DNA of 64,000 nucleotides from Perna viridis (GCA_037379345.1 CM074516.1:47281626-47345625), one strand, 5' to 3'; counted from the first letter of the stretch, positions 8,642 to 49,975 are shown. Notes: generated by a model not told the origin, from the letters alone. Made by a program: numbers and translations.

Positions 8642-9454
8642 CTAGTTATCCATCACTTCACGTCTACGACGACGTCTCCTCTCTGAAGCTGATTCCTCCT
8701 CTCCAGCTGCCTCAGCTTCTCTTTTAGCTCTCTCCTCACGTCTACGCCTTCTCCTTTCTTCCAAAGACTCAGAGCCTGATGGTTCTTCTTCTGCTTCCTC
8801 CCCTCGTCTCCTCCTTGTCGATGATGATTCTGCTTCAGCTGCCATGGCCTCTTCACGTTCCTTTTTCTCCCTCTCAAGTCTTCTCCTCCTTCTTCTGGCC
8901 TCTAGTGAGTTATCCTCCTCATCCATATCCACAGGCTCTGGTACTGCCTCTTCTACTTTGGGAGACTCCTCAACCTTTTCTTCTTTTGGAGGTTCTTCCT
9001 TTTTTTCCTCCTCTTTAGATTCTTCTTCTTTAGCAGGTTCTTCTACCGTTACTTCTTCCTTTACTGGTTCAACTTTTTCCTCTTGTTTCTCAGGCTCAGC
9101 TTCCTTTTCATCTGGTTTTGCAGTTTCTTCAATTCTGGATTCCTCTATAGATGAATCCTGTACCTTTTCTTCTTCTTTTTGTTTTTCTCCAGCCTTTTCC
9201 TCTATTTTAGATTCTTCAGTTTTTTCCTCAATCTTTTCAGTATCATCTGTCTTAGTTTCCTCTTTTGTATCATCTGATTTTTTCACATCCTCTTCAACTG
9301 TTTCTTCAGTCTTGAGCTCAAACGTAGCTTCTTCCTCAGTGTTTTTATCAACAGTGTCTTCTGCTTTATTGTCTGGTTCATCAATCGTTACATCCGATGA
9401 AATGGTAAATGTTGCAGATTCATCTACTTCATCTTTCTTTTCTTCTGAATCTTT
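8642..9454 (-). CDS. SH3BGR: SH3BGR large acidic/Arg-rich tail exon carrying the stop codon
   Basis: 813-nt open frame (part of ORF 8642..9511) starting after tttcaaag; KDSEEKKDEVDES...RRRRRRREVMDN*. Confidence 0.8.
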   Translation of the reverse strand, partial: KDSEEKKDEVDESATFTISSDVTIDEPDNKAEDTVDKNTEEEATFELKTEETVEEDVKKSDDTKEETKTDDTEKIEEKTEESKIEEKAGEKQKEEEKVQDSSIEESRIEETAKPDEKEAEPEKQEEKVEPVKEEVTVEEPAKEEESKEEEKKEEPPKEEKVEESPKVEEAVPEPVDMDEEDNSLEARRRRRRLEREKKEREEAMAAEAESSSTRRRRGEEAEEEPSGSESLEERRRRRREERAKREAEAAGEEESASERRRRRRREVMDN

Positions 9455-12400
9455 CTTTGAAATTAAGTATAACAATTTAAGAATTTGATAAGGATGTTCC
9501 TTGTTTATCATAGTAAATCGTGAATATTTTAGTGAATATTATGTTCCTTTTACATTGACCAGTTGAATGACTGACCAGATAAAAGTAATTTCAGACAGTG
9601 AAAAACAGAGTAACAAGATTCTGCGAAAGTTCCAAAGTAAATCTTATTTATAAAAGAGAGTTTTTGAAAGGTAAGTAATGAAAGGTGAAAGAACAAGAGA
9701 AAGTGAAAACTATTTCTGATATACTAGTAATTGTTTTAGAACTAATGAAATGAATAGACATGTACATGTATATGTTATTATTGTTTTTCTTTCCATTTGG
9801 GGCATGCTTTTTACAATCACCTATTTTTTTTTCAGTTGAAAGTAAACTTAATAAAACAGACAAGAAGATATACATTATAAAGATATGATCACAATCATAA
9901 TTGGTTAGTAACAGTGGACCTACAATCTATAGAAATAAGATTTTTAAGAATTAGTAACATGTTATTGAGGACGGTGCATTTCTTACACTTACTTCTTCAG
10001 TCTTGGCTTCTTCCTGTAATGCAATACAATTTGTTTTAATATAATATACAACACACTATCAATAAAAACTTATCAATAAAACCAAATATTCCTTTAGACT
10101 AACCTTACATAAGATACATGTACCTATGCCATCGTTATGAACCTATTCATGATATATATTTGCTAATTTTAAATTCTACACAAAAAATGTCTCTATCAAA
10201 CATATACAATATTCATATTCAACAGAATGTTATAAATGCAACAACAAAACAATCAACAATTCTTCCATATTCATAAAACTCAATAGACATATCAGTAATT
10301 ATATGTGATACAGCCTGTGATAATAATCCAATTTCAAGTTTCTGTTGCTTTTCTTTACTGGGAATGACATTAATTAAGTAGATTTTATTTGGAAATTTTT
10401 TCAAGTTTATCCTGAAATGCTTTATTTGCAGTATCTCGGGTCAAAGATTTACATAACAGGCATTCAATCTAAGCTCTTTTCAGATTTTTTTTTACCTTGG
10501 ATTCCTTCTCTTCTTCAACTGGTTTTTCCTAAGTAAGAATATTTACATTGTAAATACATTTAAAAACCAAAAAGAAATAGTAAACAGTTATCTTAAAAAG
10601 AACAAACATGAACATGACAAAACTTAGGAAGATTTTAATCTGACAATTTATATGTATTACTATAGGATTCTAAACCTTATGTGTCTTTATGTGTGTGTAA
10701 ATTTATAGTTTCCTTATAAATCTTTCCAATTAGATTATCCAAATGTAAAAGTATTCAAATAAAAAATTAAATACATTATTTCAAATTTTTCTTTATAAAA
10801 ACATGCAGAATCAAGAGAAGATGCTAACACACACACACACACACACACAATGATCCAGACACACACAAGCAATGATCCAGACACATACACAATGATCCAG
10901 ACACACATGCAATGATCCAGACACACACACACGCAATGATCCAGACACATACACAATAATCCAGACACACACACACACTGATCCAGACACATACACAATA
11001 ATCCAGACACACACACACAATGATCCAGACACATATACAGTGATCCAGACACACATACAATGATCCAGACACGCACACAATGACCCAGACACACACACAA
11101 TGATCCAGACTACTTAATCATTTATAATAACTATACAGGCATAGGTTCATTTGTAAAACGTACTGATACCAACATAAAAATAAAGAATTTAAACCTGCAA
11201 AAATCATGACAAGACAGTTAAATGTTGTACTACAGTAAACAATCTTAACTGAAAAGGTCCACACCATGCTGAGTACATATACTGGATAAGGTTTCTGGAC
11301 ATCTGATCAAAAACTACAGGAACACACACATCTTTCATAAATGGAAAGTTCTTGCCCTATTTATAGATCACACAGCAGTCACTTGTTCCAAAATCAAAGC
11401 ATGCCTTTTTTTTTAGGTTCCAAAAAAAGGTATCCAGAAAGAAAATGTGTCATATCTAGTAACATGCATTAATTGACCACTTCATGAAAACACTCAGAAA
11501 GAAAAAAATGTCATAGGAAATAAAACCCAAGGTAATAAAACCATGCCATCAACCTCAGTGGTAACCTTCTCCTCAGCTTTGTCCTTTTTATCTTCTGGTT
11601 CATCTGTTTTATAATCTTTGGATTCATCTGACTTAACCTCACTTTCTTCCTTTTCGTCAGTTTTTGTACCATCCTTACTATCAATATCATCCTCCTTTTT
11701 GTCATCTTTTTGTTCTATAACTGTTTCATCCTTCTTTTCATCACTTACTTCTTTTTTGTCATCTTCATCTTTCTTCTCGGTCTCATCTTTATTTTCATCA
11801 GTAGTTTCTGTTTTATTTTTCTCATTTTCTTTGTCTTCCTTTTCCTTTTCTTCATCTTGTTTAGCTACATCCTCTATCAACTCTGATTTTTCCTGAGATG
11901 ACAATATTTATGTATTTTCTCCAAATATTTAAAATGAACAGTGATAAAACATGAGAAAACCTGGCCTTTTTGTCTTTCAAATTCATATTTTATTGTAATC
12001 AAATGTGTGAAAAGGTAACAAATTGAACTGAAATCACTATTACGATGGGAGCATATAAAAGGTTTTATTTTTTTATTTGTTGCACAATTTTACTAAAAAT
12101 TATTACCACTAATTATTGGCTTTCATGGAATTGGACTACTTATTAATTGATTGATCAATTATAAATGAGAAGACAAGACTGTAGGGGTTGGGAAGGCAGG
12201 GGGCATGAGCCTTTTGCCCCTTCAGACAAAGAATGACCACTTCACATAAAAAAATTGATTTCCTTTCCAACCACTGAGACTGTTATTACAAATTGCACAT
12301 CTGCTAAATATACTACAATCACACACACAAATATCTTAAATCTAATCAAGTTACTGGTCATTTAAGTCTGACAGGACTCAGATGCAAACAAACAAAAACA

Positions 12401-15400
12401 TTACATCTAATCTATGCACTACATATAAAATCATTCTGCATTGCATATTTTTGAAAAATCTTAGTCCTATCCAAAAAGGAGATTACTTTCATTTACACAT
12501 GTTTATTCTCACTCTTTTACTGTAAACTATAAAAACAATCTAAATAACTTGTATATTTGACACACAATATAAAATACATTAATATCTTCTATTTCAAACC
12601 TCCATAAAACATTTTTTAACACATGCTAAAATGTGCAGGATTATAATAACACACACTGAACAATACCAACAACATAACATAACTAGAACTGTAACACCCT
12701 GCATATAAACAGTCTTCATATCAGGCACCAAACATTTTTAGTTTTGAATAAAACAAACAGATCTAAAATATCTAATTCAATAGTGATGTTTACAGACAGT
12801 AGTTGAACATGTATATTAGTTTTGCTTAACTTCTTTTACTCCAATAAACTCTAAGCTCAATTTACTACATGTACGAACATGTACACATCTAAATCCAGAC
12901 AAAAATTCAACTTGCTGTTAAAACTCATCAAATATTGTTTGGTGTGTACTATTATCTATACCAATTTGTATTCCTTATAAAGACTGTTGATGTCAGGGAT
13001 TAGTATAATAAAAACAAATCATTCAAGTTTAGTCAACTTATACTTTCAGGTGTAAATGATGAATCAAATTATCTAACTACATTTGTATATCAGTACCATA
13101 CTAGCACGCAAATGTCAACATTCTTCTATAGAAAATTAAATCTTTTCTGAAATCATCTGAAAATTCTGGAGAGATAATTAATATATTTCAATGAAACACC
13201 TTGAATAAAGTAAACTGGTAATAAATTAGACACCTTTACTCAAATCTCTTAAGATTAAAAAAAATTAGACATAAAATTTGTAAATTGAGATATGATAAAT
13301 TGAGATCATGTTAAGAATGAACTGTAAATGTAATTCATGCTCATGCTTGGTAACCATGGATACCTCGTCTTTCTTTTCTTCACATTCTTCCTCCTGATCA
13401 TACATCATTAAATTAGAAGTACAATGGTAATGTAGAAGTACAATGTTAATGTACATAAAACCCCAAAAACACCATAAATAATCAGATTTCAATAAATTCA
13501 TGTGTACATACATGTACATGAAAAATAAACAATTAAAATAATCCTCCAGTCCAGATATCCACACTTTACATTATTCATGGATGGATGAAAATCAAAGCAA
13601 GTTTAAGTTAGCCTCATTAATTTTTATACTTATATTGGTTTTAGACATCTGTAGTGATAATGTTTAAAAAAAACATGCTCATTCAACATTTTCTAACAAC
13701 TGAAAATAAAGCACAGTGTTCTCTCTAATACAGAAATGGAGAGGTAAAGCATCCTGTCCTCAAAGACCCAAGTATTGATAAACAGTGTCATCTAAGCCAT
13801 CTCTATACAAAAATACCATTGATGATTTCATTTTCCTTCAAATGCTTTATATACTATGTGTATTGTAACAATATGATAAATCTGAGAGTCTGTGGTACAC
13901 CATATGTCTAGCACATTACAAGCTTAAGTGTCCTGTTCCTGTGTCCCTCTTTTTTTTTCAGATCCTTGCTAGAACACTGAAGTATAAGTTTGCTCGGCTT
14001 GATTTTACTCTGAGTAATAACTGGGAGTACCAACAAGGTCAATCTGCATTGCATATATATACCTACTGATACCTAATGTAAATACTTCCACATATTCTTC
14101 TGTTTGTTACACCAGAAAAAAATATTCATTGAAATTAACCTTACCCCTGTCACAGTGACTGTTGCTTCACTCTTTTTTACTGGTGAGGCCATCTTTAAAA
14201 ATTCATACATAGTTTGTTCTTCTATGCTCATGTCAAAGTCTTCACAATCCTGTAAAAAATAAATAAAAAGATCTGTCATATTAAGGTCAATGTGTACAGT
14301 GTAGCCTTACCATATCTTCACACATTTTTTAGAGGTGTTCTTGGTTTTCAAGGAACATTCAAGTATAACAGTAACTGATCCACATGTAACAAGTTAATTA
14401 ATACATGTTTAACTTATTTCAGTAAATACATGTACTTGATTTTTTTGTGCAATTACAGTATCAATGTTTAAGAAATGTGGTACTTATATTACATATGTAA
14501 CATTTGAAGAAGTCAGTGAGGTGGCATTAATCAATGAGAATGACAACTGCAGCATGGAGAGTTAAAAAAAAATAAAAGTCCCTTCCTACCAACCCTGTTT
14601 TTTTCTTTGAGGTGACCAGAACCACACACATTTTTTTTATTTGGCCTCATCTCTGATACTTACACCACAATACTCATCATCAACAAATATCTGAGGTGGC
14701 AAAGGAACTGCTCCTTCCTTCTTAGTTTTACTATTTGCTCTCATAAATTTTTTAGGTTCTTCATTTTGTGGGTCAGAAATGTCAATTTCTTCAAAGTCAA
14801 TTTTTAAACTCTGTAATATATCCTTTATGTGCTGCTGTTCTTTTCTCATCTGCAAAAAAATCGATAGTAGATGATAATTCTATACATGTAGGTACAAAAG
14901 TAGATGTGGCTTTTTTGTATACAACTAAAAATATTGAGACAAACTACTTGTATAAACTATATGACACAGACATACATGTACACTTAGATCAGATATAAAA
15001 GTACATTTCTAGCTACAGTATCTGCTAGCATTTCAGAAAGTCAAGAAAAAAAGACTAGTACATGTATGTGTAGCAAATCATGACTGCTAACTTACACTAC
15101 TGTCAACCAAAATTTTATTTTCTCCCTTCTTAACAGTGGAGTCACTCATGTCCTCCACTGTGACTCCACTGTAACTCCACCTAAGTAAAAACTATGATGA
15201 AATTGCTCCATTTCTTAACTTTTCAACATTTTTTCTGTCCATAACTGAGAACTGTTATTAAACTGCTAGAACCATTGAATATACCTTGGTATAAAGACAG
15301 GAGTAGTAAACTATAAACACTTTTTGAAATGGTGACTCCACTCATATATCTCCAGTGTGGAGAGTGGAGTAATTAAAATTTGTGTTGACAGAAGTGTACA

Positions 15401-18400
15401 TGTACAAAATTTGTAGTACATTTTGTACATGTATGATGTACATAAGAAGAACTACAACATGTACATGTATAAACATTGAAATTAAAACCCAATTAGAATT
15501 TTGTACATGTATGTGTAAACAAAAAAATCTGAACTATTTTCTTGTAATTACACCTTACAAAAATCATTTTTTTTAAAATGCATGATAAATCTTGATGTAT
15601 TGTATCAAATGAGAACTGTTTAAAATCATTATGAAGTCTCTGATCACAAGCTTATAATCAATCACTAAAATACTTTAGATATGTGTAAGTTATAAAGATC
15701 ATGGTGTGTACAAATGTAGAACAAAAACAGATGTTTGTTTGTACTCATAAATAAAGTAATTAAAAGTATAAAAATTTTCCTGCAAACAATACATGTAGCT
15801 GCAACATTTGTTGCAAATAGTTGCCACAACATTGCTGCAAGTAATTGCGGCAATGTTGTAGCAAATGTTTGCAAGAAAACTTGTTTGCATATGAAAAATG
15901 AACATTTACTACAATGTTGCAGTAAATACATTGTATTTGCAGCAATATTGCAGCAAATATTTGAAGGCTTATTTTTCCATAAGAGGGCCCTATGAATGGA
16001 TTTTGGTTGGCAAAAAGTCCAAAAAGTTGCATGGGGCATCAACTGTAAATCATAATTATTTTTTTCATTTTTATCAATTTAGATCGAAGATCAGAACTGA
16101 TATAGCAGTCGCCAGAGCCTTTAGATTTGATAAACCTGTTAGCATCTGAAATCATCTTACACTACAACAGAAAAATAGTCCCACTGGTATACCCAATTAA
16201 GGTTCAAAGCAGATAGTTACAGTTTTCACAACTAACTTTCCAGTTCACAGGCCCCAAATACATTTTTCAGGAATTTTTATATAAGTGACTGCTGGCCTGT
16301 AGTAGTTAATTTTACAGGCCCACCTCCATTTTGACAAGCCTTGGGCTTCAAACTATTTCTTAACAGTGAAGACTGTAGTAAGATCCACTTTATGAGGTAT
16401 TTCTTACATATCATATTTAATTCTATGCTATATACACCAATAAACAAATTCCCAATAAACAATTTATACTGCAAACTAAATATGATGATTAATTTGGTTT
16501 GTATTAACAAGGAATCAATTAAAAATAGTTGACCTCTAACCTCACCAGCACTTGTTTATTTCTATGCATTTACTTGAATAAACCAATTGTTCATTATATT
16601 ATATATGTCAATATATTTAAGTAGCCTACAAATACAATGTTCTTAGACCCATAATAAATCATTTGATGTTTAGCTAGAAATAAAAAGCCTTTGCGATTAT
16701 AAATAGTCATCATTCATAGAAATGAAAAAGAAAGAGCAATGCTGTATGCCAACTGAAAGAGCTGTCCTCAGATATTTCATGCAGGACCTGGTGAATCCGT
16801 ATATTTACAAAAAGGGGGCAGTGGTTCTAATCAAGAAAATTATGTAAAGAAAGAGGTTCCAGACAGGGACTACACTCCCTGTTCCAGACTATTTGCCACT
16901 AATTTTTTGCTCAACTTTTAACAAAAGGGTAGCATAACCCCAAAACCATCTTCATCTATCACCAACTGTATCGTGTATTTTTATTACGGTTACCACCCAG
17001 TAACATCGGAAGCCCGGAGATAACAAAAACAATAAAACTTAGCTTACTATGGCATAGGAATTTCGATAATGCATTTCTAAGGAATGGTGTCCGTCTGATG
17101 TCTGGTGATATTGCTTTTTGTAATAATTATAATCATATTTGGCTATTTGGCCATGTGTTATAATGATACGGCCATATGTGCTTCAGGACCTTAAAGGTGC
17201 ATGACAAGTGTTTCCTGCACCAGACATAATTGTTGAAATTTTATTCAAAGACTTTGGCGTTTATCCCAATGTACATGTACGTGTCCCCTGAACTAGGTGT
17301 CCAGAAACTAAGTATTTTTACATGACACACAAGTGTCTATGGGGTAACTTGTAGGACTTGAGCTGTATAGCTTATCAACTTAGAAATTTGTAGCTAGTTG
17401 AGAGGGACATGTATCTAAGGGCATGCTTTATTTCAATGATTGTGGCTAAGTTTGAATGATTTGACAGACAGTTTCTACCTGGATATCATAAATTGAATTT
17501 CGACTTGAAAATTTAGAAATTGGGAAAGGCCAAATAGTAGTTTGCAGTTCAATAGGGTATGTAAGTCTCGTCATGTGACTCCATGATTTTATGAGAATGG
17601 GTCCTCGTCTACCATTCAAATGCATGGAGATTCGTCATTAACACATCAATGGGTTCAATATTAAAAGCAAAATTTTTTTGTGTGTATACATACTGATAAA
17701 AATGACAAATATCTAGTTCTACATAATAAAAATATTAAGAAAAGCATAAAATAGAAGATTTTGCATTGTGATTGCAGCGTTTCGATTTCCCAGAAGTAAA
17801 CAATAAAATGCAGATCGGTTTTCGGATTTCAATATATTCAACATCGGAAATTCCGGAAGGGAAACTGAAACCAGAACAAGACTTACAAACCCTATTATGC
17901 ATGTATGTATGTTAGATGTTTTGTATTAATGCATCTAGGTGTTCCATGTAAACCAACACTGAACTTGAATATTTCGCCAACTGGCGCACTGCATGCTACA
18001 ATGCATCACAAATTTTGTTGTGTGTTTATTAAATGTCTTTGGTAATCAGAATGATGAAATTAAATAAATCAAAGAGTTCATTCCATCCGTCTGTCTAAAT
18101 AGGTGATAACATGAAGAATCATAAATATAGATAGAATTCAAATTTCAGTCTGATGGGATTATTTGTACAAAAGATGTTGTTTTTTACACTCTCCAAATTT
18201 TGTTGGTGAATTGGAGTTACCTTTCAATATCAACCATTTACAACAATAAGCTAGTGTATTAGTATGTTTGAATTCGATCACCTTACTTTCCTTTTATCCC
18301 TGCTTTTATACCATCTCTACTTTTTTTGACAATTATTTGAGGCATAAAAATTCAAACGATCAATATAAATTGATTCAATACATGAGTCCTTTGATTTAAG

Positions 18401-21400
18401 ATACAGGTAATTGAAAAATTATTTTGGTTCACCTAAACTGCAAATTAAAACTCATTTTACCTATTGAATTACTTTTCAAGTAACAGAATTATCAATTCAC
18501 TTACAAAATAAGCATTATTTTATCTAAATAAAACATTTTATAAACCCAAAATGGATATATAGTTGTTTTTCATTTTTACAGAATGCATGCCATTATATAA
18601 GTTTTTCAAAGGGACATAACCCACCAACACAAGAAAACCTGGTTGGCAGTCTGATTGGGGAAAGGAAAAACAGTACACATTTTTCTTTGAGACTTGAACT
18701 ATTTTTACTTCTGTAAGTAGCTAAATGGTTTGAAATTAATTATTTAAAAGTATCCAAGTGCACTACTGTCAACACAAATTTTAATTTCTCCACTCTTCAC
18801 AGTGGAGCACCATTTCAAAAATTGTCTGAAGTTTACTACTCCTGGCTTTATACCAAGGTACATTTAATGGTTCTAGCAGTTCAAAGACATTTTTCATTTA
18901 TGGACAGAAAAAAAGTTGAAAAGTAATGAAATGGAGCAGTTTTATCCTAGTTTTTACTTAGGTGGAGGACAAGAGTAACTCCAGTATGAAGAGTGGAGAA
19001 ATAAAAATTTTGGTTGATGGTGGTGTACTAACCATAGCTCCAATAAGTCAAATATTGAATTTTAAGTCTACTGGTCTACTGCTATCCATTGCCTTAATCA
19101 GAAAGTAAACCAGTTAGAGAGTTAGTTCCCTTTGCTCAAAATTAAAAAAAAACCACAAAGTTGAAATCAGGAAAATAAGAATAGTCAAATAGTCAATTGA
19201 CAAAGTTATGTGTATAAGGCTTTGAAAGTTAATTTATTATCCTGAAATTGTTAATTGCTAATTTGGATGTTATCATCCACGGATTTGACACGATTGGCAA
19301 ACCTTTCATCTCAGATTGACAGACTGACTAAAAGACAAGTTTTATTTAAAAGTCAGTGCATTAACTTCCAACAAAACCTCTGAAGAGCATTTAATGGACT
19401 ATATTGGTAAAAGCAAGACCCTTCTGGAACAACTCATGTTGATACTTAAAAATTACATAACCTCACTTCTCATTCAGTTTTTGCCTAAAAAAAAACGCTC
19501 CATTGAATATACCGGAACTTATGTGTACAGTGATTGGGATTCAAATTTTGCCAATGGGACTATGGCCCCCTTACCCTTCAATTCAATGGGAAATTTTCAA
19601 TTTAAATGGGACAAAATTTGGAATAGAAGCTAAGGCCGGCTAAACGTAGATATTGAAGACCAAATGCAGGGATTTAGCCAGGATTTTCAACCCATTAGTC
19701 ACTTTTGCCCAAGACTAAATCTCAGTGCTGTTTTTTCTTTTCCATCGCAAATTTATCAGCATGCATGTATATACATATACTTATAACAACTATATTATAA
19801 ATAATAACATGTTCATTGTAAGTTGCTGCTCGCCAACCATTATATGTTTTTGAGTGCGCTAGTAACATCTGACTCGTGTGTTTTATTGGCTGAAGTCACT
19901 CCTTGCTCAAATTCTGGCTTCATGGATTTGGTCTGGACTGCCCGTTTATGATCAGCAGTGTTGATGTGCTTCTGTATATTATCTTTTAGGAATGTGTTGC
20001 TTCCGATAGAAAATGTATTGGTAAGTCCAGCATCTTGGCAGTCATGGTAGTACATCGCCCTATCTTTGCAAAGAAATATCTTTGACCACTCTGGTTTAAA
20101 TTTTGACTTTAATAGTCGATCACTGCGACTCTTTGTAGTAGTTGACTTATTTTTAGACTTTTGACCTTTAGGTGCGTTGTCATGTGACGACGAACTAAAA
20201 TAGTTCGTAATGGCGGACATAGTTGCGATTCGAACTGTGATTGAAAAATCCAAACATCTTTCCATTATAAATACATACGATGACACTTTGAGTACTTTGA
20301 GGACGTGTCACAGCGCTCAACAAACAAATCATTACCGTTAATTAATTTGTTTGTCGGGATAATTAGCCTCAACCAGGTACTCAAGCAAGGTGTGATCAAA
20401 GGTGATGCAATCAAAACATTGGTCATGATTGTTTATTGTAAAACCCTAATTGGCTTGGGAAAGGTAATAAAGTTGTCAATTAAGTCAGCACTCCACAGTA
20501 TTGTAGAACTGCCTAATTTTGGTCTTGTAATCTGACGCTTTGTAACATTTATCACTTTAAAAAAATGTCAAGCATCTGTAAATCTATATATTTAGAAATA
20601 GCTCTAGCCAAGGCCTTCAGGATGCAGTAAAAATTTTCTGGAAAAAATTACCCACAGCATATAGGGTTACCATAGAAACCATGCAAAAATATGCGAAAAT
20701 TTGCAACAAAAGTTCATAAAATCAGGTTTAAAAATATCAAATTTCCCGCAAAATATCTGCAATTTTTATTTCATCCCCTGAAACTGTTCAAACTTTTTCC
20801 TTCGAAAACCCCTTCCTCATATGGGCATCGCCGGTTAGATTTTGAGCTATTTCACTTTGTAATCCACTTATTAAATTTAGCATGGTGAAAAATTGACTTA
20901 CTTTCACTTTCACAATGAAGTCAAATTGTCATTGAAAAAAAGCCCCTTCAACATTGAAAATATATAAAACATTGCAAAATACTTTTAAAAGTCCCCTTTT
21001 TTCATAAAATGTTTTATCAACAATAGATCCTTCATTTTTAATCACTATAGCAACCACCGGTTTCCATTTATGTCATTTTTCATCCCTAGCCAAAAGTGGG
21101 AAACTAAACTAAACTGTGGAGTGCTGGCTTAAGCAGAATGCAATATTAAATATTGTAATTTTCTAGTTATTTCTTGAAAGCTTACCTTCTTACGAGTACA
21201 ATGATACCAAATTTATCATAATTGGACAATTGATAACAATTTTAGAGGCATTCTCATTCTAGGCTATCTCCTCTTCATTAGTGTAGAACTTTCCTTATAC
21301 CTAAGTGCAGATATGCATTTCACTGTTTTGCTATAATCATCTTTTAAATGAAAATTTCCACTTTACACATACAAAATCACAACCTATATATACTTATAAA

Positions 21401-25590: not shown

Positions 25591-25975
25591 TTTGAAAGGA
25601 ATATAAGATCAAATAAACTTTTTACTACGAAAATGCACAAATGTATATGTATCAGTCAGCGTTATCTGGTAAGGATGGCTCAGGTTTCGCTAGATTTGCA
25701 TAAAATAATTCCGGGTAAGTCTCTCACCACAGAACGTCAACGTTTTTGGGTTTCCGGTTAGCAGTTTTCGCAACGTCACAAACATTCTTCACATCTGTTG
25801 TGGCTTGTTGCTGGGCAGGTAAACAAATGCACACCGGTGCTAAATAGTTTCACTTTACATGTATCAGTGGTGTATATGCACTCCTGGTAGTAGGGAATAC
25901 ACAAAGAACTGTGTGACACCGTCATTTTCTAATGTAATGAATCTTTAAAATCTTACGGACAAGGTTAATCAGGTA
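25591..25975. promoter_or_regulatory. Probable bidirectional promoter SH3BGR / LCA5
   Basis: CpG-retaining patch just upstream of the SH3BGR ATG; X-box-like GTTGCTGGGCAG (25807-25818) abutting forkhead GTAAACAA (25819-25826); + strand donor candidates at 25819 and 25973 for a non-coding LCA5 exon 1 that would splice to the acceptor at 28832. Confidence 0.5.
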
Positions 25976-26238
25976 AAATTATCTTTATAATGAGACGTGT
26001 GTTACTGTTAGTGTTAGCTCTTACATGGTAAATAACAGAACACTTTAAAATGAAAAAAAGGTTTTGTTCTCAACAATTTTACCATATACATGTATGATCA
26101 TTTTAAAACATTCCTCTATAGAGCAAATACATATCGTAGTTTTATTTTGTTATGATTCATATGAAAAACTATAAATGACAATGTTCATGTAACTTTTCAC
26201 TGAAACTAAAAGACTTGTCAAGTCTCTATATGCATCTC

Positions 26239-26350
26239 TAGTCCAAAGATAATTATACTGTCTTGGGAGGCTAATTTTCATTGTGCTTGGTCGTCTTTCT
26301 TGAGGCTTTAATGTCGGATTCCCTCAGTGAACGCCATGGTTATCTGGACT
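26239..26350. repeat. Short dispersed repeat with TAGTCC..GGACT ends (second copy 48142-48261)
   Basis: Both copies share TAGTCCAAA..CTGTCTTGG.AGGCTAAT..TGCTTGGT..TGAGGC..TTATCT.GACT; TAG/CTA termini are reminiscent of Academ. Confidence 0.55.
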
Positions 26351-26643
26351 TGCATGTAATTCTCTCATGCCAGTCATGGAACTGAGTAAGACTCCAACAA
26401 CTCCTAGTAATATGAGGAAGGTATTGACTTTTAGTGTAAGTGAACTCTGAAGCATAAAGCACTAGGATCCCTTTTCAATGAAGTAAATTTCATGCCAGTT
26501 TTTCTTAGGGTATTTTCATCAGTTGGAGCCAGCAAAGAACATTCCAAATATTTGTAAAATTATCAGTTAAACAAATAACATAGATGTCTTTGAAATGTTT
26601 TGTCAAGGAGGCATTTTTTCACTCTTTCTAAAGTTTCAATAAG

Positions 26644-37900: not shown

Positions 37901-40480
37901 TAAGGCCATGTCATCATTTATTTGTGGATAAGACTGTCTTGTGGAATGTAAATAATATTTTTCTTGAAACTTATTTCATTTTCTCAAACTTTTCTCTTTT
38001 CGATAAATAAGGAAATTATCTAAATTAGATTTTACTGCAAGTATGATAGTATGGCAATATTTTCTTGAAAGTGAAAGAAAGTTCCACTGTTTTTTGTCAG
38101 AAAAAGCAAAGAGCTAGTCGTCAAAAGGAAAAAATCACTGCATCATCTACCTTCCTCACAGAGAGCCATGAATACTATCCCTCTCAGCCCTCAAGTGACC
38201 AAAGTCCTAAGGTACATCTTTGTGTTCTCAGTAGTCTCCCTTTATAGCATGTATATGTATATATCTTTTTAATTCTTGCTGTAGATTTTAGTATGGATAT
38301 AAGCTTTCCAAGTCATGTTGCCTGTAATATTTGTGCTTCTCTCTGTCAATTATCTGTCATTTTTTATTACACTGTGAGTGTTTCTGATTAACTTCTTGTG
38401 TTAGGATTTGACAATTTTGTTTTCATTCATTGAATTAAAACATTTGATAGATGTGACACTCTATCCTGTCAAATACTTGCTGGTAAGCCTTTTGAAATGT
38501 TTTGAGACAGATTGAGTGGTAAATAATTCTGCTCCCTGCCTGTGGTAAAAAAAATGGTCTAAATTTACTGAATAGAAACAAGAAAAGAAAAGAATGTGAT
38601 TCCATATTGAGAAATAAGTTGATATAAAAAGTGGTTTGGTGAGAACTGAAAAAAAAAAAAGAAAAGCACGTATCTACCGAACAATAATATTGTCTTAAAT
38701 GTCCAGTGGTATTCATTGTGTTAAAAATAATGCTAAATTCCCCTCCCCCTACACACATACACAAACCAAAAACCATAAAAACAAATCAAATGAAAAATTA
38801 CAAAAATACACACAAGTTAGATAAGTGAACTTTTCACACACATAATCATATTTAGCATAGTCACATACTGACCACATATCTTAATTGTTATTACTCTAGC
38901 TTTATGTGTATGTTTGCCTGTCAATTCTTAAGTTAGAGTTTATAAATGCTGTGTTACTGTAACATATTTTTAGTTAGACACTATGTTGTTTTCTTTTAAT
39001 ACATGAATCTTACAATTCTATGTCACTATATAATATTTTGATTGAAGTTTGTTTGACATGAACAGAAACAGCAACACTTTCTTAATTGTATACAAGTACT
39101 GTTAGCACTACTCTTAATATTTTGAATTCTCTATGAAGCATTTAGTTACATTCTAACATCTATTACACATATTTAATGTTTATTCATTTCTTTCATCCAT
39201 TTATGATTCTTTTCAGTAATGATAGTATGTACACACAAATGATAATTCAAGTTTATGAAAAAATAAGAGGGCAGCAATATAAATGAGCTGAAATTTTTTT
39301 TTTATTAATATTATTTAAATCACATTTTCAGAATCAAGAACGCCAGAAGAGAGAAAGGGAGGAACAACAGAGACAGAGAGCAGAGGAGGAAGAGCGCAGA
39401 AGACAACGAGAGCGGGAGGAACAAGAAATGAGGGAGTTAGAACAACTGGAGGTTACAAGGAGACAAAGAGAAGCAAGAGAAAGGGAAGAGCAACGAAAAC
39501 GTGATCAGGAGGCAGAGGATTGGATGAAAAAGATGGAGAATGAAAAACGACAGAGAGAAGCGGAAGAACAACGGGTTCGTGAGGAGCAGCAGCGTAAAGA
39601 AAGAGAAGAGAGAGATAGAAGAGAACGTGAAAGACAGGAACAGGAGAGAAGGGCAAGGGAAGAGAAGGATAGAATGGCAATGGATTCACAGCTGGCAGAG
39701 GAGAGAATGAAAAAGGATGAACTATTAAGGAAGTTGCGCATGATTGATGAAGGACAAAATAAAACAGAGGAAAAGAAATCCTCTGGGGGTGAACTATTTT
39801 TTGCTACCTCTTCTAAAGCTAGGCGAGATAGTGAAGGTTCAGCTACATCTAGCAAGAAAAGTAGTTATTCTTTTACCAAACCTGTTGAAAATATGCATCA
39901 TGGGAAACCTGCCAGAGAGGATGTTACAGTTCCTTACATTGAACGGCAAAAGAAACAGCAGGCTGAGTCACCAGTCAGCGGCTATCAGCCATCATTTGGT
40001 CTTAGTAGTGGAATAACTGGTACAAATAAGAAGACAACCAGAAAGTCAGGAGGTCAGGTTATTTTTGGTGATTTTGAAAAAGAGGACAAAACTGTCAATA
40101 AATCAACCAATAAAAAGGGTGACTTAATGGCAGAATTGTTTGGCAATTCTTCAAGCAAACCAACACGAACAACAGAACTTGATAATGATGATATATTTAA
40201 ACCTCCTGTAAGAAACACAAAAACAAATGCAACTAAAACATCAGGTTTCCCATGGGAAGATGATAAAAAATCAACTACTACATCACACAGGGGTGAGCGA
40301 GCGTCCTCTTTATTTGGAGGAGGAGGTAGTGGCATATTAGACGATAATGAACCTTCTGTTTTTGATTCATCAAAACTGTTACCGAAAAGAGGCAAACAAA
40401 CAAGTACAACATTCCAGACTAAGCCTGTAGTGTCAGCAATAGATCACATGGATGATGATATCGAGGAGGTCATTTTGTAG
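28919..40480 (+). CDS. LCA5: Lebercilin (LCA5/LCA5L family) ciliary coiled-coil protein, about 910 aa if all exons are included
   Basis: Exons 28919-29045, 29922-30439, 33649-33786, 34068-34274, 35270-35509, 35860-35940, 36312-36398, 36777-36854, 38101-38211 and 39332-40480, all GT-AG and in phase. Lebercilin-domain motifs QRMLSSKNLRINELKNQ, RQEKALNKFENEESDLPQLLQRHNNEVRTLR, EKVKAAELANIYS, GYQPSFG, KKGDLMAELFG and the C-terminal DDIEEVIL. Confidence 0.92.
30688..31006. repeat. 53-bp tandem repeat, 6 copies, in an LCA5 intron
   Basis: Unit TGCACTTTTGGCACTGTGATATAACATTGGAGCCTTAAGAGCTGTGCTATTTA. Confidence 0.95.
31470..31913. mobile_element. Decayed MITE
   Basis: CAGTGGATTCCTGTTAATCACAT ... ATGTGATTAAGTGTTATCCACTG inverted ends. 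Confidence 0.5.
33101..33250. repeat. Fold-back (hairpin) element
   Basis: 20-bp perfect arms TAAGGAATGACTGTTATATT/AATATAACAGTCATTCCTTA, with inner arms AAATAACCTCAAT/ATTGAGGTTATTT and TGCACAC/GTGTGCA. Confidence 0.8.
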
Positions 40481-45324: not shown

Positions 45325-48300
45325 TCATTGTATCAGCCTCTTTACTCTGTAGATTGTTGAATTACAAACTAAAACCCAGCATCCAATACCTAAACCACCT
45401 AAAATGACATGGAGAATTAATACAAAGAAAACCAATAGCCTGGGTAACAAAAGGAAGAACTTCAGTATGTATATATATATACATGTCTACCATTAATAAA
45501 ACACCAATAAGTACAAAACCTTATCTTGCTTATCTCGTACTTAAAAAAAGAGCAAGATTGTTCGGGGTTTTTTTTATTCACAATTAAAATAGAGATTTAT
45601 AAATTATTCAGCTTTATGACATGCCACAGAATGCAGAAAACATATTTACAAAAAAAAACATTACAATTCTACCATTTGTGAGCATTTTATCAAAGATATT
45701 GTAGTGCCCCAAATGTAATATTTCTTTGTTATATAATTAGTGATTGTTAAATATGATCTCTTATTACCTGACACGCCAGTGGGAAAAGCTATGATTTTCT
45801 GGAAGGGATAAAACCATTCTGGATGGAACATAATTAAAGGTTCACTTCTATTAGAAATCATCAAGATGATCATAACTAAAGCCTGCAAAAAAATTGAAAA
45901 ACTTTGAACAAGACACAATTTATTTTTTAACTCATGGTAAATTTTTATTATGCATAAAATGATTTCAAATCTTGATGGTAAAAAAATTTGTATGAATAAA
46001 TGAATTTTGTGTCTTTTGGGAGGAACAAACTCACTACAATTGGGCAGGTTACAGATCCTCTGATAATGACCTGTTCAGTTCAACCAGTAAAGATGACTTT
46101 GGACAATCAAGTATCACAGTAGATCTTATATGTACTATGACCAATTTCACCCTAACAGCAGCCAGTCTACATTTTAATACAATTCAAACTGGAATGACTG
46201 AAAATATTTATTCTTCTGGTAACAACTATTATTAATTAGCTTGACCACTTACAGTATGTTTATTACAAGAACATGTAGCTGATATAATTTTAAATACCAG
46301 TTGATTTATATAAACAATTTTAATATGATGTGCTCCAAAGGGTAAAGAGTTGATAAATATGCTGCCACCATCAAAGATTTATGATGGTCTTATTTCCAAT
46401 TTCATAGGTAAGTTTCACTCAATGTCACTGATGTAAGAGAATTTTGGTCCATAACGGTTCCAATTTTGTGCAAAACAGAGACTGTGTCTTTCATAAACAT
46501 GAGGAAATTATTTCTTTTAGAATAGGAATAATACATGGAAACTCTTTATCACTCCTTAGGGCCTTTCTGGCCATTTATTTCGCCTTTTTTCCCCCAAGAG
46601 AAAATGCTATCGCTTGGTGTAACAAAATGCGACATAAGTGGCCATCCTGTATTAAACCAATGATGAAATGAAGTTTCCATGAATTGTTTCTTAATTACCT
46701 GTAAAATATAAATGGATATTTTTACACCAACTCCAACCATTGCACACTTGTTATTTCTATCGCTTGCTGAAAAAAAGTAATTTAAAAACAATTATTCAAA
46801 ATACGAGAAAATCTCATGGTTCCCACATCCTCAGCTACAAACTGATAGTAAACATAGAAAATCTCATGGTTGCCTTTCTTACATCCTAAGCTACAAACTG
46901 ATATTCTCATGTGACATGCTTCAAAGCTCTTTTGACCACAGCCATGGTAAAAAAAGTGACCAATACATGACCAACATTCTGTGCAACTCATAGGCTGCAT
47001 CTATTCACAAAGATAAATCAAAATAAATCACAGAAACTCAAATTTATCTTGTTTATCACTCCTTCGGGCCTTTCTGGCCATTTATTTCGCCTTTTTTCCC
47101 CAAGAGAAAATGCTATCACTTGGGGTAACAAAATGCTGGCCATTTATATCATTATTTATTTTTATTAAATAAAGTAGGAAACAGGACAGGTGAACTGGTA
47201 AGGTAAAAATCCTCCCTTATTCTAAACTATCTAATGCTGAAAATCTATTAAGTTCAAATAACACTAATATGTTCAGATTACTTTGTTCTTTGACCTCTAC
47301 CAGTAGTTTATCTATTTTTCTCTGCAGTTTGGCATGTTTTGCAAATTCGTCCACCATACTGACTCCACCCTGCTCTGCTTTTAAATCCTGAATCTGTGAT
47401 CTGGTGTTTAACTCTGCATCACTGACGGAATAAATTTTCTTACTCAACTGAAAAGGAGAACATGTGTATATTATAAACAATTTACATGTCTGAATAAGTA
47501 AAATTAAAAAATGTACATGTCTTTTTTCAACTTACATGTAATAGATGTCATTCAAATTTTAATATTCATACATACAAAAATACTTTTAATACTTTTACTT
47601 TAGAAGTCATTCATTCATTAAGGCAACTCTGCCTTTCAGACCCGCCACATGGTTTGATCCAGTAGTACTCACTTCTGGTCAAAAGGCATGCATTTTTTTT
47701 ATGACTAACATTTACAAAGACATTTTTAAAGCATAAGATAAATTATTCTAGTGAATATTAAGAATCTGACACCCTGGGGTAAGGTTTAATGTGGCCACTG
47801 ATCCGTCATGACCAGGTACAAAATATAGGCTGCTTCAAAATAGTCACTTAATAAACAAACTGCATGATATAATCAATTAATAGTTATTCTGGTTTAAAAT
47901 AGTAATTTAAATGAATTTTCGAACACATACTGGTAAGTATTGATCATTCATGGTCTTTCTTTATATTTGTACAATTTTTTACAGGAAATTGCAGAGGTTC
48001 CGTCTCAACTCGTGGGTGAGATAAGGAAATCTTGCATGTAGCTAAATACAGGAATTTTCTTGTCTCTTTTGTGAGAAAAAAGTGTGAATTTATGCCAGTG
48101 ATTTGTACTATTTTGAAAATTTTAGTGATCTCTCTTACAACTAGTCCAAATAACTACATATATGCTGTCTTGGTAGGCTAATGATAATTTTGCTTGGTTG
48201 AGATCCCTGACTGGCCTGAGGCATAAACATCAGATTAAAAACTTCATGTTTATCTAGACTATCGTACATCTGATATTTTGCATATCTTTTAATCTAAATA

Positions 48301-49975
48301 ATCATGATGTTTACTGAGGTATTTTTTTAACCTGACGACTATGCATCACGAACTCTATGGAGGCAACTAAAATATATTAAGCTAGCAAGCTTGCTCATAA
48401 ATGTATAGAAATTTGTCGAAAAACTCATCGCACTGACACTTCAGAAACTTTCATCCAAGCTAAACACTACATCTTGGTACATTATAAAGCTTCAGAAAGA
48501 GTAAAAATGCAGCCTAGACAAAACATTTAAAAGACATCTATGTTATATTTCCTATTAGAGATCAAGATAAAAACCTGCAATCTACCCCAAACCTGTAACA
48601 GTTAATTTTAGGAATATTTTTGGAATCTCCTACTTACATACTTATGAACAATTCCTAAAAACACCTTGGCAAAATGATAAATAGCATGAAGATTAATTAG
48701 TTGAAAAGGGAACTTGGTACTTTTGCTTCGGACTTCACGGAGTTCCTCATAGGAAGCATCACGAAGCGGTGTAAGCTCTTAGGTTATAACATGTACTATC
48801 TTAAATTCCCTTAAGGTTCCCCAAAATACTAACAAAAAAAGTCATGTCCCGGAAATAACAAAAAAATGACTGTCCTTACGAAGAACTCATCGTTTCCTTA
48901 AATCATACACATAAAAATATATATATTTTAAGATTAGGTTTCAGTAAAAATAACTTCATCTTTTCTGGTAGTTTTCGAGTCTTTTAATTTTTTTATTAAT
49001 TAAAAGAAGTGAATATGATGTGATTTTAAAAAGTTTTTAAAAAAACATGTATTTCCGCTGTTCCACTGTTGCTGTTGTCAAGAACCAAACCCACCTCGAA
49101 AAAAATATAACTGATTGTATTATCCAAATCGGAGCATAACTTTTCAAGATAGGAAAGGCGATCATTTTATTCTTGGAATTTACTAGTTGCATCTGAATTT
49201 TGTTTACGTCACGATATGTATAAAATATTCAAGCCATCTGTGGAGAATTGTAATATTTCCAGTATCTGTACAAATTAAGTTCGACAATGCTCAGGCATCT
49301 GAGGGATGAACTTCAAAGGAAGAAGAATTAATCTGACCTGCTAAAACTGAAAAGGATGTCTTAGGGGTTAAAAATTGTAAAGTAAGGAAAAGTGCTACAA
49401 AGTTATCGACCATTTTTAAAGCGAGAGGAAAGGGGGGATGGGGGCTAGGATTTTAGAAAAACTTTTACTCATTCACTGAAAAAAAAACTTTTCCCCCAAT
49501 ATTTAACAAGGCAGACTTTCAAATAAACATATTAATTTTGCTTGCTTCTGAAATATAAAGAAAAATATTGCACTTACAAAACAAAAAATCTCTTACCACC
49601 CCACCTCTTTGTGCCAAAGGGGTTTTAATGTCCTTTACTATTTTTACGAGTTTGAACAGACTGTACACGTATTGTAAAGCTCACGGTGCTTGCTGATTTA
49701 AGCAATGCCTACATATTATAAGTGTTATTTAAACAAACATAAGCTAAAAATCTAGGCAAAATAAAACTTAGTAGTGTAGTACTGAAAATTAACCTAAGTT
49801 AGTCTACCAAGAGTGGCAAGACTGCATGGACATGGTGCCATTGGTGGGCCAAATCATTGTGAATGAATGTGGTAATATAAACAACATATCTTACCTGTCT
49901 AGAAATCTCTTGTGAGAAACTTGACAAAACATTGAATAAAATAACCAAAATCAACACAAATGCTAGCAAAAACAT
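45325..49975 (-). CDS. GET1: GET1/WRB, tail-anchored protein insertion receptor (167 aa)
   Basis: Five exons 49975-49895, 47447-47282, 46766-46699, 45882-45768 and 45398-45325 (81+166+68+115+74 nt = 504). TM1 MFLLAFVLILVILF, coiled coil SMVDEFAKHAKLQRKIDK, and EWFYPFQKIIAFPTGVSGGLGIGCWVLVCN match WRB/CHD5. Candidate polyA signal at 44923-44918. Confidence 0.95.
46545..47136. repeat. 86-bp direct repeats (46545-46630 and 47052-47136) flanking GET1 exon 3
   Basis: TTTATCACTCCTT.GGGCCTTTCTGGCCATTTATTTCGCC..CAAGAGAAAATGCTATC.CTTGG.GTAACAAAATGC occurs twice. Confidence 0.85.

What the first reader, a model, noticed from the sequence alone, without database searches (positions are those of the whole stretch)
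8642..49975. GET1-LCA5-SH3BGR gene block has the same order and orientation as human 21q22
Seen: read on the minus strand the order is GET1 (forward), LCA5 (reverse), SH3BGR (forward), with LCA5/SH3BGR head-to-head and no gene found between them. Established: human 21q22.2 has GET1(WRB), LCA5L and SH3BGR in this arrangement, with an annotated GET1-SH3BGR readthrough, and LCA5 neighbours SH3BGRL2 on 6q14. ORC3, the next gene here, is on human 6q15. Inference: if this is a mollusc, the three-gene block dates to the bilaterian ancestor, which implies a shared regulatory constraint.
Basis: partly seen in the sequence, partly recalled or inferred. Interest (0 to 1): 0.8.

Follow-up and report, generated by a model that had tools for sequence, protein, structure and literature searches.

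The report
Ancient GET1-LCA5-SH3BGR gene neighbourhood
A mussel chromosome carries GET1, LCA5 and SH3BGR in the same order and orientation as human chromosome 21, and LCA5 and SH3BGR start about 50 bases apart from one shared, conserved promoter, which probably explains why that pair has stayed together since early animal evolution.

Summary
The window comes from a mytilid mussel: its LCA5 exon is 83% identical to Mytilus edulis. On the minus strand it reads GET1 forward, LCA5 reverse, SH3BGR forward, with ORC3 next. LCA5 and GET1 are single-copy. The SH3BGR gene is the SH3BGR/SH3BGRL-type copy, and a separate SH3BGRL3-type copy lies on another chromosome.

Spliced RNA contigs from four studies place LCA5 exon 1 at 25787-25970 (+) and SH3BGR exon 1 at 25735-25546 (-). 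The two mRNA 5' ends are therefore about 50 nt apart or less, which is a bidirectional promoter. Its single-copy core aligns with a second mytilid, scallop, abalone and limpet. A composite motif (ACGTCA, then GTTGCTNGG-N5-TAAAY) recurs at the same place in an annelid.

The head-to-head LCA5/SH3BGR pair is present in bivalves, gastropods, an annelid and a hemichordate. It is interrupted by one gene in a sawfly and was not found in amphioxus or two echinoderms. The tail-to-tail GET1/LCA5 pair was seen only in mussel, abalone and amphioxus. The full triple was seen in mussel and abalone.

An ancient block is supported. A regulatory constraint is shown only for LCA5/SH3BGR. This is a new, well-documented member of a known kind: conserved microsynteny through a shared promoter. 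GET1-to-SH3BGR readthrough was not tested.

The parts
8642..25735 (-). SH3BGR-type gene, pro-orthologue of vertebrate SH3BGR/SH3BGRL/SH3BGRL2. The 5' end is set by RNA contigs and the 3' end by the stop of the last acidic ORF.
   Evidence: The long acidic tail ORFs at 11497-11904 and 8645-9511 are assigned by position and by the long products annotated in Lottia, Pecten and Haliotis (730, 492 and 764 aa). Their splicing was not checked with RNA.
25546..25735 (-). SH3BGR exon 1: 5'UTR plus ATG at 25590, coding MVIKVYISSVAGSSK, with a GT donor at 25545.
   Evidence: RNA contigs in 4 runs reach 25711-25735 and continue into exon 2 sequence (loose end at 25540; matched at 14814-14843).
14661..14849 (-). 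SH3BGR exon 2, the core of the SH3BGR/glutaredoxin-like domain.
   Evidence: Pfam E 1.6e-16. PDB hits to SH3BGRL and SH3BGRL2 at about 3e-9 and none to SH3BGRL3. Splice junction from RNA.
14145..14249 (-). SH3BGR exon 3, the end of the domain (DCEDFDMSIEEQTMYEFLKM...).
   Evidence: Flanked by ttacag and gtaagg. tblastx match to Lottia.
25650..25880 (.). Core of the LCA5/SH3BGR bidirectional promoter. It is a single-copy conserved non-coding block. It holds ATTTGCAT at 25694, CCGGAA at 25709 and 25752, ACGTCA (the reverse strand of TGACGT) at 25734 and 25773, and GTTGCTGGGCAGGTAAAC at 25807-25824.
   Evidence: 83% identity over 197 nt to a second mytilid whose introns do not align. Aligns to Pecten with E 2e-13 and to Haliotis with E 0.005; the Lottia match is weak but at the same place. 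The composite motif is also present in Owenia. Single copy in the genome.
25787..40480 (+). LCA5 (lebercilin) gene. Non-coding exon 1 is 25787-25970. Exon 2 is 28830-29044 with ATG at 28919. Exon 3 is 29921-30440. Further exons are 33650-33788 and 34065-34277, followed by small exons. The last coding exon runs from about 39428 to 40480, with the stop at 40478-40480.
   Evidence: GT..AG joints 25970>28830 and 29044>29921 in four runs from four studies. tblastn of the Mytilus edulis LCA5 protein. Pfam. Single copy.
45325..49975 (-). GET1/WRB coding region. Exon 1 is 49975-49895. Exon 2 is 47447 to about 47295. Exon 3 is about 45930 to 45768. Exon 4 is 45398-45325 including the stop. It lies tail-to-tail with LCA5, with 4.8 kb between the stop codons.
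   Evidence: Pfam CHD5. PDB GET1/WRB hits. Single copy. Splice sites read from the sequence. The exon 2/3 boundary is inferred from frame and consensus, not from RNA.
50270..57421 (+). ORC3, 5' part. ATG at 50270, exon 2 at 52198, and ORC3_N exons at 53006-57421. It is head-to-head with GET1.
19843..20286 (-). ORF with a zf-C17orf113 zinc finger, a transposon-like remnant inside SH3BGR intron 1. It is not a gene lying between LCA5 and SH3BGR.
25001..25130 (.). Dispersed repeat inside SH3BGR intron 1, MITE-like by its nearby inverted 40-nt matches. It accounts for the deep RNA contigs laid there.
   Evidence: At least 30 copies at 95-100% identity on many chromosomes. The contigs align for only about 120 nt and have loose ends.

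Best explanation
This is a stretch of a mytilid mussel chromosome that preserves an ancestral bilaterian neighbourhood. On the minus strand it reads GET1 forward, LCA5 reverse, SH3BGR forward.

The core of the block is the LCA5/SH3BGR pair. The two genes are transcribed divergently from one compact bidirectional promoter, with mRNA 5' ends about 50 nt apart or less. That promoter core has been kept in sequence across bivalves and gastropods. Its key composite motif is a CRE-like ACGTCA followed by GTTGCTNGG-N5-TAAAY, and it is also kept in an annelid.

Any breakpoint between the two genes would cut through a promoter that both need, so rearrangements that separate them are selected against. 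This keeps the pair together in most lineages.

GET1 lies tail-to-tail with LCA5. That adjacency is also ancestral, because it is shared by mussel, abalone, amphioxus and vertebrates, but it is much less stable. No regulatory link was found, so it probably persists through weaker constraint or slow rearrangement.

Shown: gene identities, orthology, order and orientation, the shared promoter architecture, sequence conservation of the core, and the distribution across taxa. Inferred: that promoter sharing is the cause of the conservation, and that the motifs bind CREB/ATF, ETS and RFX or forkhead factors.
For: Identities and copy number.

Taxon. The LCA5 exon is 83% identical to Mytilus edulis, 64% to Pecten and 60% to Sinanodonta.

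Shared promoter. Spliced contigs in 4 runs from 4 studies show LCA5 exon 1 starting at 25787-25834 (+) and SH3BGR exon 1 reaching 25711-25735 (-). Canonical GT..AG joints fix the strands.

Conservation of the core:
- In 20 kb compared with a second mytilid, only coding exons and this block align (alignment).
- The block is single-copy.
- It aligns at the syntenic place and orientation in Pecten (E 2e-13), Haliotis (E 0.005) and Lottia.
- The composite motif occurs once per locus at that place in 6 species, including the annelid Owenia. There was only one non-syntenic hit in about 390 kb searched on both strands.
- The 230-bp core holds 2 of the window's 10 CCGGAA and 2 of its 6 TGACGT.

Distribution of SH3BGR|LCA5 head-to-head:
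- Present in Lottia, the second mytilid, Owenia, Saccoglossus, Pecten and Haliotis.
- In the sawfly an ABC transporter gene lies between the two (54, 57).

Distribution of LCA5|GET1 tail-to-tail: amphioxus and Haliotis.

Human side:
- WRB, LCA5L and SH3BGR sit in one TAD and share an eQTL (PMC6088800).
- One SNP is reported as intronic at the locus labelled LCA5L/GET1/GET1-SH3BGR (PMC12147916).
- LCA5 and SH3BGRL2 lie within 0.23 Mb on 6q14.1 (PMC9276112).
Against: - Contig ends only approximate transcription start sites. No 5'-complete reads were available.
- Co-expression of the two genes was not measured.
- Transcription-factor assignments rest on consensus matching. No strict X-box is present.
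- The pair is absent within 10 kb in amphioxus, where PLA2 lies upstream, and in the urchin Diadema, where CNNM does. No gene is called upstream in the crinoid. The constraint can therefore be escaped.
- GET1 was not within 10 kb of LCA5 in Pecten, Owenia, Saccoglossus, Diadema, Anneissia or Neodiprion, nor within 5.5 kb in Lottia.
- Flanks were capped at 10 kb, so these absences are weak evidence.
- Strand orientation of the human genes rests on my knowledge of the annotation and on the existence of the readthrough locus.
Confidence: 0.82

Rival explanations
1. Neutral persistence. The three genes are simply leftovers of ancestral gene order in slowly rearranging genomes. The close promoters are a consequence of compact spacing rather than a functional coupling.
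For: Many ancestral linkages survive in molluscs, amphioxus and vertebrates. DOP1 lies 210 kb away and PSMG1 lies on the same chromosome, so large-scale linkage is retained anyway. The GET1 adjacency is patchy. The pair was lost in amphioxus and in echinoderms without those lineages losing the genes.
Against: Neutral decay does not predict an 80-200 nt non-coding block kept at the same position and orientation across bivalves and gastropods while all surrounding non-coding DNA is unalignable. It also does not predict a composite motif kept in an annelid. Both vertebrate ohnologue pairs, LCA5L/SH3BGR and LCA5/SH3BGRL2, kept the adjacency.
Confidence: 0.1
2. A larger regulatory or transcriptional unit. 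The whole block is held together as one chromatin domain, possibly with neighbours such as PSMG1. Alternatively it is held by a GET1-to-SH3BGR readthrough transcript that must cross LCA5, as annotated in human.
For: In human the genes share a TAD and an eQTL, and a GET1-SH3BGR locus is in use. Mussel and abalone keep all three genes in the human order. In a crinoid, PSMG1, a gene of the same human TAD, sits tail-to-tail with LCA5.
Against: GET1 is not next to LCA5 in most of the invertebrates sampled. In the four RNA runs no contigs were laid across 27432-28553, so there is no sign of abundant unspliced transcription running from the GET1 side into SH3BGR. In the mussel PSMG1 is 15 Mb away. 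Readthrough splicing itself could not be tested.
Confidence: 0.07
3. Artefact of paralogy or convergence. The mussel genes are not the orthologues of the human ones, or the arrangement arose independently.
For: A second SH3BGR-family gene exists on C12.
Against: LCA5 and GET1 are single-copy. The C12 gene is SH3BGRL3-like, while the window gene is SH3BGRL/L2-like. The LCA5-adjacent genes of the other species all score higher with the window type. Independent assembly of the same oriented triple is vanishingly unlikely.
Confidence: 0.01

Closest known systems
Human 21q22.2 GET1(WRB)-LCA5L-SH3BGR, and its ohnologue pair LCA5-SH3BGRL2 on 6q14.1
   Same: The same three gene families in the same order and relative orientation, with LCA5(L) and SH3BGR divergent. 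The human genes share a TAD and an eQTL (PMC6088800). ORC3 and DOP1 are linked in both species: ORC3 is adjacent and DOP1 is 210 kb away in the mussel, while in human, from memory, ORC3 and DOP1A lie on 6q14-q15 and DOP1B on 21q22.
   Different: The mussel has one copy of each gene rather than duplicated copies. It has ORC3 head-to-head with GET1, where vertebrates have HMGN1 and BRWD1. The mussel promoter gap is about 50 nt by RNA. I did not examine human sequence, so whether the conserved motif exists there is unknown.
Conserved ancestral microsyntenic pairs of the co-regulation type (Irimia et al. 2012, PMC3514665)
   Same: A 5'-5' orientation that is itself conserved, a very short intergenic distance, conserved intergenic sequence, and retention across phyla. 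These are four of the six predictions listed in that paper.
   Different: Co-expression and insulator depletion were not tested. I could not check whether this pair is already among their roughly 600 pairs, because the supplement is not held. Neither LCA5, SH3BGR nor WRB appears in that paper's main text. Three targeted full-text searches combining these gene names with synteny or bidirectional-promoter terms found no paper on the topic.
Genomic regulatory blocks (developmental gene plus bystander genes)
   Same: Gene order kept by cis-regulatory DNA.
   Different: There is no developmental regulator, no array of dispersed conserved elements, and no gene desert. The conserved DNA here is one promoter-proximal block.
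Classical bidirectional promoters enriched in ETS/GABP-type CCGGAA motifs (for example HSPD1/HSPE1)
   Same: Divergent start sites less than 1 kb apart, no obvious TATA spacing, and CCGGAA and CRE-like sites concentrated in the gap.
   Different: The two partner genes have no evident common function: one is a ciliary transport protein and the other a thioredoxin-fold, acid-tailed protein. The core also carries an RFX-half-site-like plus forkhead-like composite.

Membership tests
Conserved microsyntenic pair held by a bidirectional promoter (LCA5/SH3BGR) | Orthologous genes adjacent in distant phyla | tested here: met
   Molluscs (5 species), an annelid and a hemichordate. Human from the literature. 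Orthology.
Conserved microsyntenic pair held by a bidirectional promoter (LCA5/SH3BGR) | Divergent (5'-5') orientation conserved | tested here: met
   SH3BGR is on the minus strand upstream of plus-strand LCA5 in every locus where both were found.
Conserved microsyntenic pair held by a bidirectional promoter (LCA5/SH3BGR) | Transcription starts less than 1 kb apart | tested here: met
   RNA contig ends at 25735(-) and 25787(+) in the mussel. Start sites are approximate. The annotated gap is 996 bp in Saccoglossus (SH3BGR ATG to the LCA5 gene start). The composite motif lies 200-500 bp from the SH3BGR ATG in five further species.
Conserved microsyntenic pair held by a bidirectional promoter (LCA5/SH3BGR) | Conserved intergenic sequence | tested here: met
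Conserved microsyntenic pair held by a bidirectional promoter (LCA5/SH3BGR) | Correlated expression of the two genes | not testable with these tools
   Only contigs were available, and their depths cannot rank genes (warning).
Three-gene ancestral block GET1-LCA5-SH3BGR | All three genes adjacent in the same order and orientation in several phyla | tested here: inconclusive
   The full triple is seen in mussel and abalone and in human (literature and my knowledge). Halves are seen in amphioxus, annelid and hemichordate. Flanks were limited to 10 kb.
Lebercilin (LCA5) family | Lebercilin coiled-coil domain PF15619 above the curated cut-off | tested here: met
   147 bits against a cut-off of 34.3. 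About 78-84% identity to Mytilus edulis lebercilin-like protein over the main exons and 68% over the short first coding exon.
GET1/WRB (CHD5) family | CHD5 domain, including the coiled coil that binds GET3 | tested here: met
   45.8 bits against a cut-off of 29.3. A second exon matches profile positions 99-147. Human GET1 chains match at 3e-8.
SH3BGR family, SH3BGR/SH3BGRL/SH3BGRL2 clade | SH3BGR domain PF04908, closer to SH3BGRL/L2 than to SH3BGRL3 | tested here: met
   60.7 bits against a cut-off of 21. PDB hits to SH3BGRL and L2 only. The C12 paralogue hits SH3BGRL3 best.
Conjoined/readthrough gene GET1-SH3BGR | Transcripts joining GET1 exons to SH3BGR exons | not tested
   The single read-laying run was used on the promoter region, and 6 kb cannot span both genes.

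The most novel reading that the evidence does not exclude
The composite element is a CRE followed by GTTGCTNGG-N5-TAAAY (RFX-half-site-like plus forkhead-like). It lies inside the shared promoter and may be a trans-phyletic cis-regulatory module. Here it is seen in molluscs and an annelid. A canonical X-box sits in the equivalent position at the sawfly LCA5 promoter, and a GTTGCTGGG site sits at the amphioxus LCA5 start.

On this reading the module couples SH3BGR to the ciliogenic programme of LCA5. The wider GET1-LCA5-SH3BGR block, including GET1-to-SH3BGR readthrough, would then be one ancient regulatory unit that survives as the human chromosome 21 TAD.
Probability: 0.18. Interest if true: 0.65.

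Novelty: new member of a known kind. Interest (0 to 1): 0.45.

Why it matters
Deeply conserved gene neighbourhoods are common in lists but rarely come with a mechanism that can be read from the sequence. Here the cause is visible and compact. It is a promoter of about 200 bp used in both directions, with a short core that is recognisable in two phyla.

This gives a small, testable model for how promoter sharing freezes gene order. It also suggests that the human LCA5L/SH3BGR and LCA5/SH3BGRL2 pairs inherited their linkage from this arrangement. Those genes lie in the Down syndrome region and in a retinal ciliopathy locus.

Finally, it separates the strongly constrained part of the block (LCA5/SH3BGR) from the weakly constrained part (GET1).

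Tried and rejected
- A word-based search with the GET1 exon found only three fragments. GET1 could therefore not be used as an anchor in other species.
- Look-ups of Saccoglossus isoform X2 and Lingula isoform X5 were not on record. Lingula was therefore not tested.
- The supplement of Irimia et al. 2012 is not held. Literature searches for the gene pair combined with synteny or bidirectional-promoter terms found nothing relevant.
- A profile built from unnamed LCA5 representatives, meant to find cnidarians, returned mostly insects and two frogs. No cnidarian, placozoan or sponge was tested.
- A strict X-box (GTNRCC-N0-3-RGYAAC) is absent from the window, so I do not call the element an X-box.
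- No Rfam RNA lies in the window that could explain the linkage.
- A regex for the GET1 'DEFA' motif and an ORF listing found no GET1 in the Owenia flank.
- The idea that the deep RNA signal at 25001-25126 is a gene between the two was rejected: it is a dispersed repeat.
- The idea that the conserved core is a shared transposon was rejected: it is single-copy.
No full-length gene trees were built, and no human sequence was fetched or compared.

Full report
WHAT IS IN THE WINDOW

The window is AT-rich (about 32% G+C). It is G000:C6:47281626-47345625 of a 723-Mb assembly in 46 contigs.

Pfam scans of the long open frames gave these assignments:
- an SH3BGR domain exon at 14640-14855(-), E 1.6e-16
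- a Lebercilin domain exon at 29921-30496(+), E 5.6e-43
- a CHD5/GET1 exon at 47220-47480(-), E 7e-12
- ORC3_N at 55060-55329(+)
- an SNF2-type Helicase_C exon at 176-463(+)

A further GET1 exon at 45664-45918(-) matches CHD5 profile positions 99-147. The GET1 coiled-coil exon matches human GET1/WRB chains in the PDB at 3e-8.

WHICH ORGANISM

A whole-library search with the lebercilin exon, followed by name look-ups, gave these identities:
- Mytilus edulis 83%
- Pecten maximus 64%
- Sinanodonta 60%
- Haliotis 52%
- Aplysia 51%

Vertebrates, amphioxus, Saccoglossus, Owenia and insects were lower. The window is from a mytilid mussel that is not Mytilus itself. Chromosomes numbered up to C15 and the 723-Mb size would fit a Perna-like species. 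That last point is my inference only.

ORTHOLOGY

In the window's own genome, Lebercilin and CHD5 each match a single locus. ORC3 is also single-copy.

The SH3BGR family has two loci. The window exon hits the solved structures of SH3BGRL and SH3BGRL2 at about 3e-9 and does not hit SH3BGRL3. The C12 copy hits SH3BGRL3 best, at 4e-12 against 1e-6. The window gene is therefore the pro-orthologue of the SH3BGR/SH3BGRL/SH3BGRL2 group. The SH3BGR-family exons that lie next to LCA5 in the other species all score higher with the window type than with the C12 type, though only marginally in Saccoglossus.

GENE MODELS AND THE SHARED PROMOTER

The runs are RNA: their contigs carry canonical GT..AG joints.

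The LCA5 mRNA has three 5' exons:
- a non-coding exon 1 starting at 25787-25834, depending on the run, and ending at 25970
- exon 2 at 28830-29044, with the ATG at 28919
- exon 3 at 29921-30440, which runs on into the exon at 33650

SH3BGR exon 1 runs on the other strand from at least 25735 down to 25546, with the ATG at 25590. It is spliced to exon 2 at 14849. The 5' ends of the two mRNAs are thus at most about 50 nt apart.

The ORFs between 15 and 25 kb lie in SH3BGR intron 1. They are a zf-C17orf113 transposon-like ORF and a dispersed MITE-like repeat.

GET1 is modelled from frames and splice consensus as four coding exons from 49975 to 45325. The exon 2/3 boundary is the least certain part. 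The LCA5 and GET1 stop codons are 4.8 kb apart, tail-to-tail.

CONSERVATION OF THE PROMOTER CORE

A 20-kb locus from another mytilid (L002, lebercilin exon about 75-79% identical) aligns to the window only at four coding exons and at 25670-25862, where identity is 83% over 197 nt. SH3BGR exon 1 is also present there, so that species has the same arrangement. The block is single-copy in the genome.

The same block aligns at the same place and orientation, 200-300 bp upstream of the SH3BGR ATG, in three further molluscs:
- Pecten: 81% over 81 nt, E 2e-13
- Haliotis: E 0.005
- Lottia: a weak match

A composite motif, ACGTCA followed about 30-60 nt later by GTTGCT(G/T)GG-N5-TAAA(C/T), occurs once per locus at that position in the window, L002, Pecten, Haliotis, Lottia and the annelid Owenia. 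There was only one non-syntenic match in about 390 kb searched on both strands.

The 230-bp core also holds 2 of the window's 10 CCGGAA, 2 of its 6 TGACGT and one ATTTGCAT. Reading these as ETS, CRE, octamer, RFX-half-site and forkhead sites is consensus matching from general knowledge, not a tested function. A strict X-box is absent from the window. A canonical one (GTTGCTATGGTAAC) does sit about 150 nt upstream of the sawfly LCA5 gene.

DISTRIBUTION ACROSS ANIMALS

Loci with ±10 kb flanks were fetched around LCA5 orthologues.

SH3BGR(-)|LCA5(+) head-to-head:
- Present in Lottia, the second mytilid, Owenia, Saccoglossus, Pecten and Haliotis.
- In the sawfly Neodiprion the two genes keep their divergent orientation, but an ABC-transporter gene lies between them.
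- Not seen in amphioxus (PLA2 upstream), the urchin Diadema (CNNM upstream) or the crinoid Anneissia (nothing called upstream).

LCA5(+)|GET1(-) tail-to-tail:
- Seen in amphioxus and Haliotis.
- Not seen within the flank in Pecten (an L24e gene instead), Lottia, Owenia, Saccoglossus, Diadema, Anneissia (PSMG1 instead) or Neodiprion.

Outside vertebrates, the complete triple was found in the mussel and the abalone. Both adjacencies occur on both sides of the protostome/deuterostome split, and chance adjacency of specific orthologues is of the order of 1 in 10,000. The ancestral bilaterian order GET1-LCA5-SH3BGR is therefore the parsimonious reading. The GET1 link has been lost often.

THE HUMAN SIDE

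No human sequence was fetched. Three papers bear on it:
- PMC6088800 places WRB, LCA5L, SH3BGR, HMGN1, BRWD1 and PSMG1 in one TAD and reports a shared eQTL.
- PMC12147916 reports a SNP as intronic at the locus it labels LCA5L/GET1/GET1-SH3BGR. This fits LCA5L lying inside the readthrough unit.
- PMC9276112 shows LCA5 and SH3BGRL2 within a 0.23-Mb duplication on 6q14.1.

The strand assignments (GET1 +, LCA5L -, SH3BGR +) are from my knowledge of the annotation.

Wider linkage fits as well. The single mussel DOP1 gene is 210 kb from the window, and PSMG1 is on the same chromosome 15 Mb away. From memory, the human DOP1A and DOP1B genes lie on 6q14 and 21q22. PIGP, however, is on another mussel chromosome.

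INTERPRETATION

The best-supported mechanism is that LCA5 and SH3BGR are locked together by a promoter that neither can lose. This is the co-regulation class of conserved microsynteny described by Irimia et al. 2012. That paper predicts a conserved 5'-5' orientation, short spacing and conserved intergenic sequence, and all three are met here.

Nothing found here links GET1 to the pair by regulation. Its retention in some lineages may reflect weaker constraint or slow rearrangement. A domain-level or readthrough explanation remains possible but unsupported, and readthrough splicing could not be tested.

LIMITS
- Start sites are approximated by contig ends.
- Co-expression was not measured.
- Flanks were capped at 10 kb.
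- No cnidarian or other non-bilaterian was sampled.
- I could not check whether this pair already appears in published supplementary lists of conserved pairs.

Noticed in passing
window 49975-50270: GET1 (-) and ORC3 (+) are also head-to-head, with their ATG codons only 294 nt apart. This is probably a second bidirectional promoter. In human, ORC3 has a different divergent partner (from memory, RARS2).
   Followed up: partly
window 25001-25130: A dispersed repeat with at least 30 copies at 95-100% identity on many chromosomes. Inverted 40-nt matches lie 200-300 bp away, which is MITE-like. It appears inside long RNA contigs from all four runs.
   Followed up: partly
window 19843-20286 (-): A 148-aa ORF with a zf-C17orf113 zinc finger inside SH3BGR intron 1. 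It is probably a transposase-derived remnant.
   Followed up: partly
window 57625-60753 (+): A Ty3/gypsy-like LTR retroelement with a gag zinc knuckle, RT, RNase H and the integrase zinc domain. It is broken into several frames and sits in an ORC3 intron. Described only.
   Followed up: partly
L013 (G000:C12:7384514-7384729): The second SH3BGR-family gene of this genome is SH3BGRL3-like. The SH3BGRL3 split therefore predates the mollusc-vertebrate divergence.
   Followed up: yes
G000:C6:47555325-47557644 and C6:32437812-32442474: The single DOP1 (Dopey_N) gene lies 210 kb from the window, and PSMG1 (PAC1) lies on the same chromosome. In the crinoid Anneissia, PSMG1 sits tail-to-tail with LCA5 (L011:24840-28260). 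This echoes the human 21q22 neighbourhood.
   Followed up: partly
L010:2390-8639 (Neodiprion); proteins P0227, P0228: In the sawfly an ABC transporter gene lies between SH3BGR and LCA5. Two cockroach gene models fuse ABC-transporter and Lebercilin domains, which suggests that this insertion is old in insects.
   Followed up: no
L010:9849-9862: A perfect palindromic X-box-type site (GTTGCTATGGTAAC) about 150 nt upstream of the sawfly LCA5 gene. GTTGCTGGG-type sites also lie at the annotated LCA5 starts of amphioxus (L005:10020) and Haliotis (L012:9979).
   Followed up: partly
window 10735-11100: Overlapping Cys/Val-rich 'ORFs' on the minus strand. They look like the product of a TG/CA-rich tandem repeat in an SH3BGR intron rather than coding sequence.
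   Followed up: no
window 39400-47500: The RNA runs hold 57-65% of the sampled words of this mostly non-coding stretch. The LCA5 and GET1 3'UTRs may therefore be long and may nearly abut or overlap.
   Followed up: no
window 176-463 (+): The last exons of an SNF2-family helicase lie tail-to-tail with SH3BGR. It looks SMARCAD1-like by eye, but only Helicase_C was confirmed.
   Followed up: no
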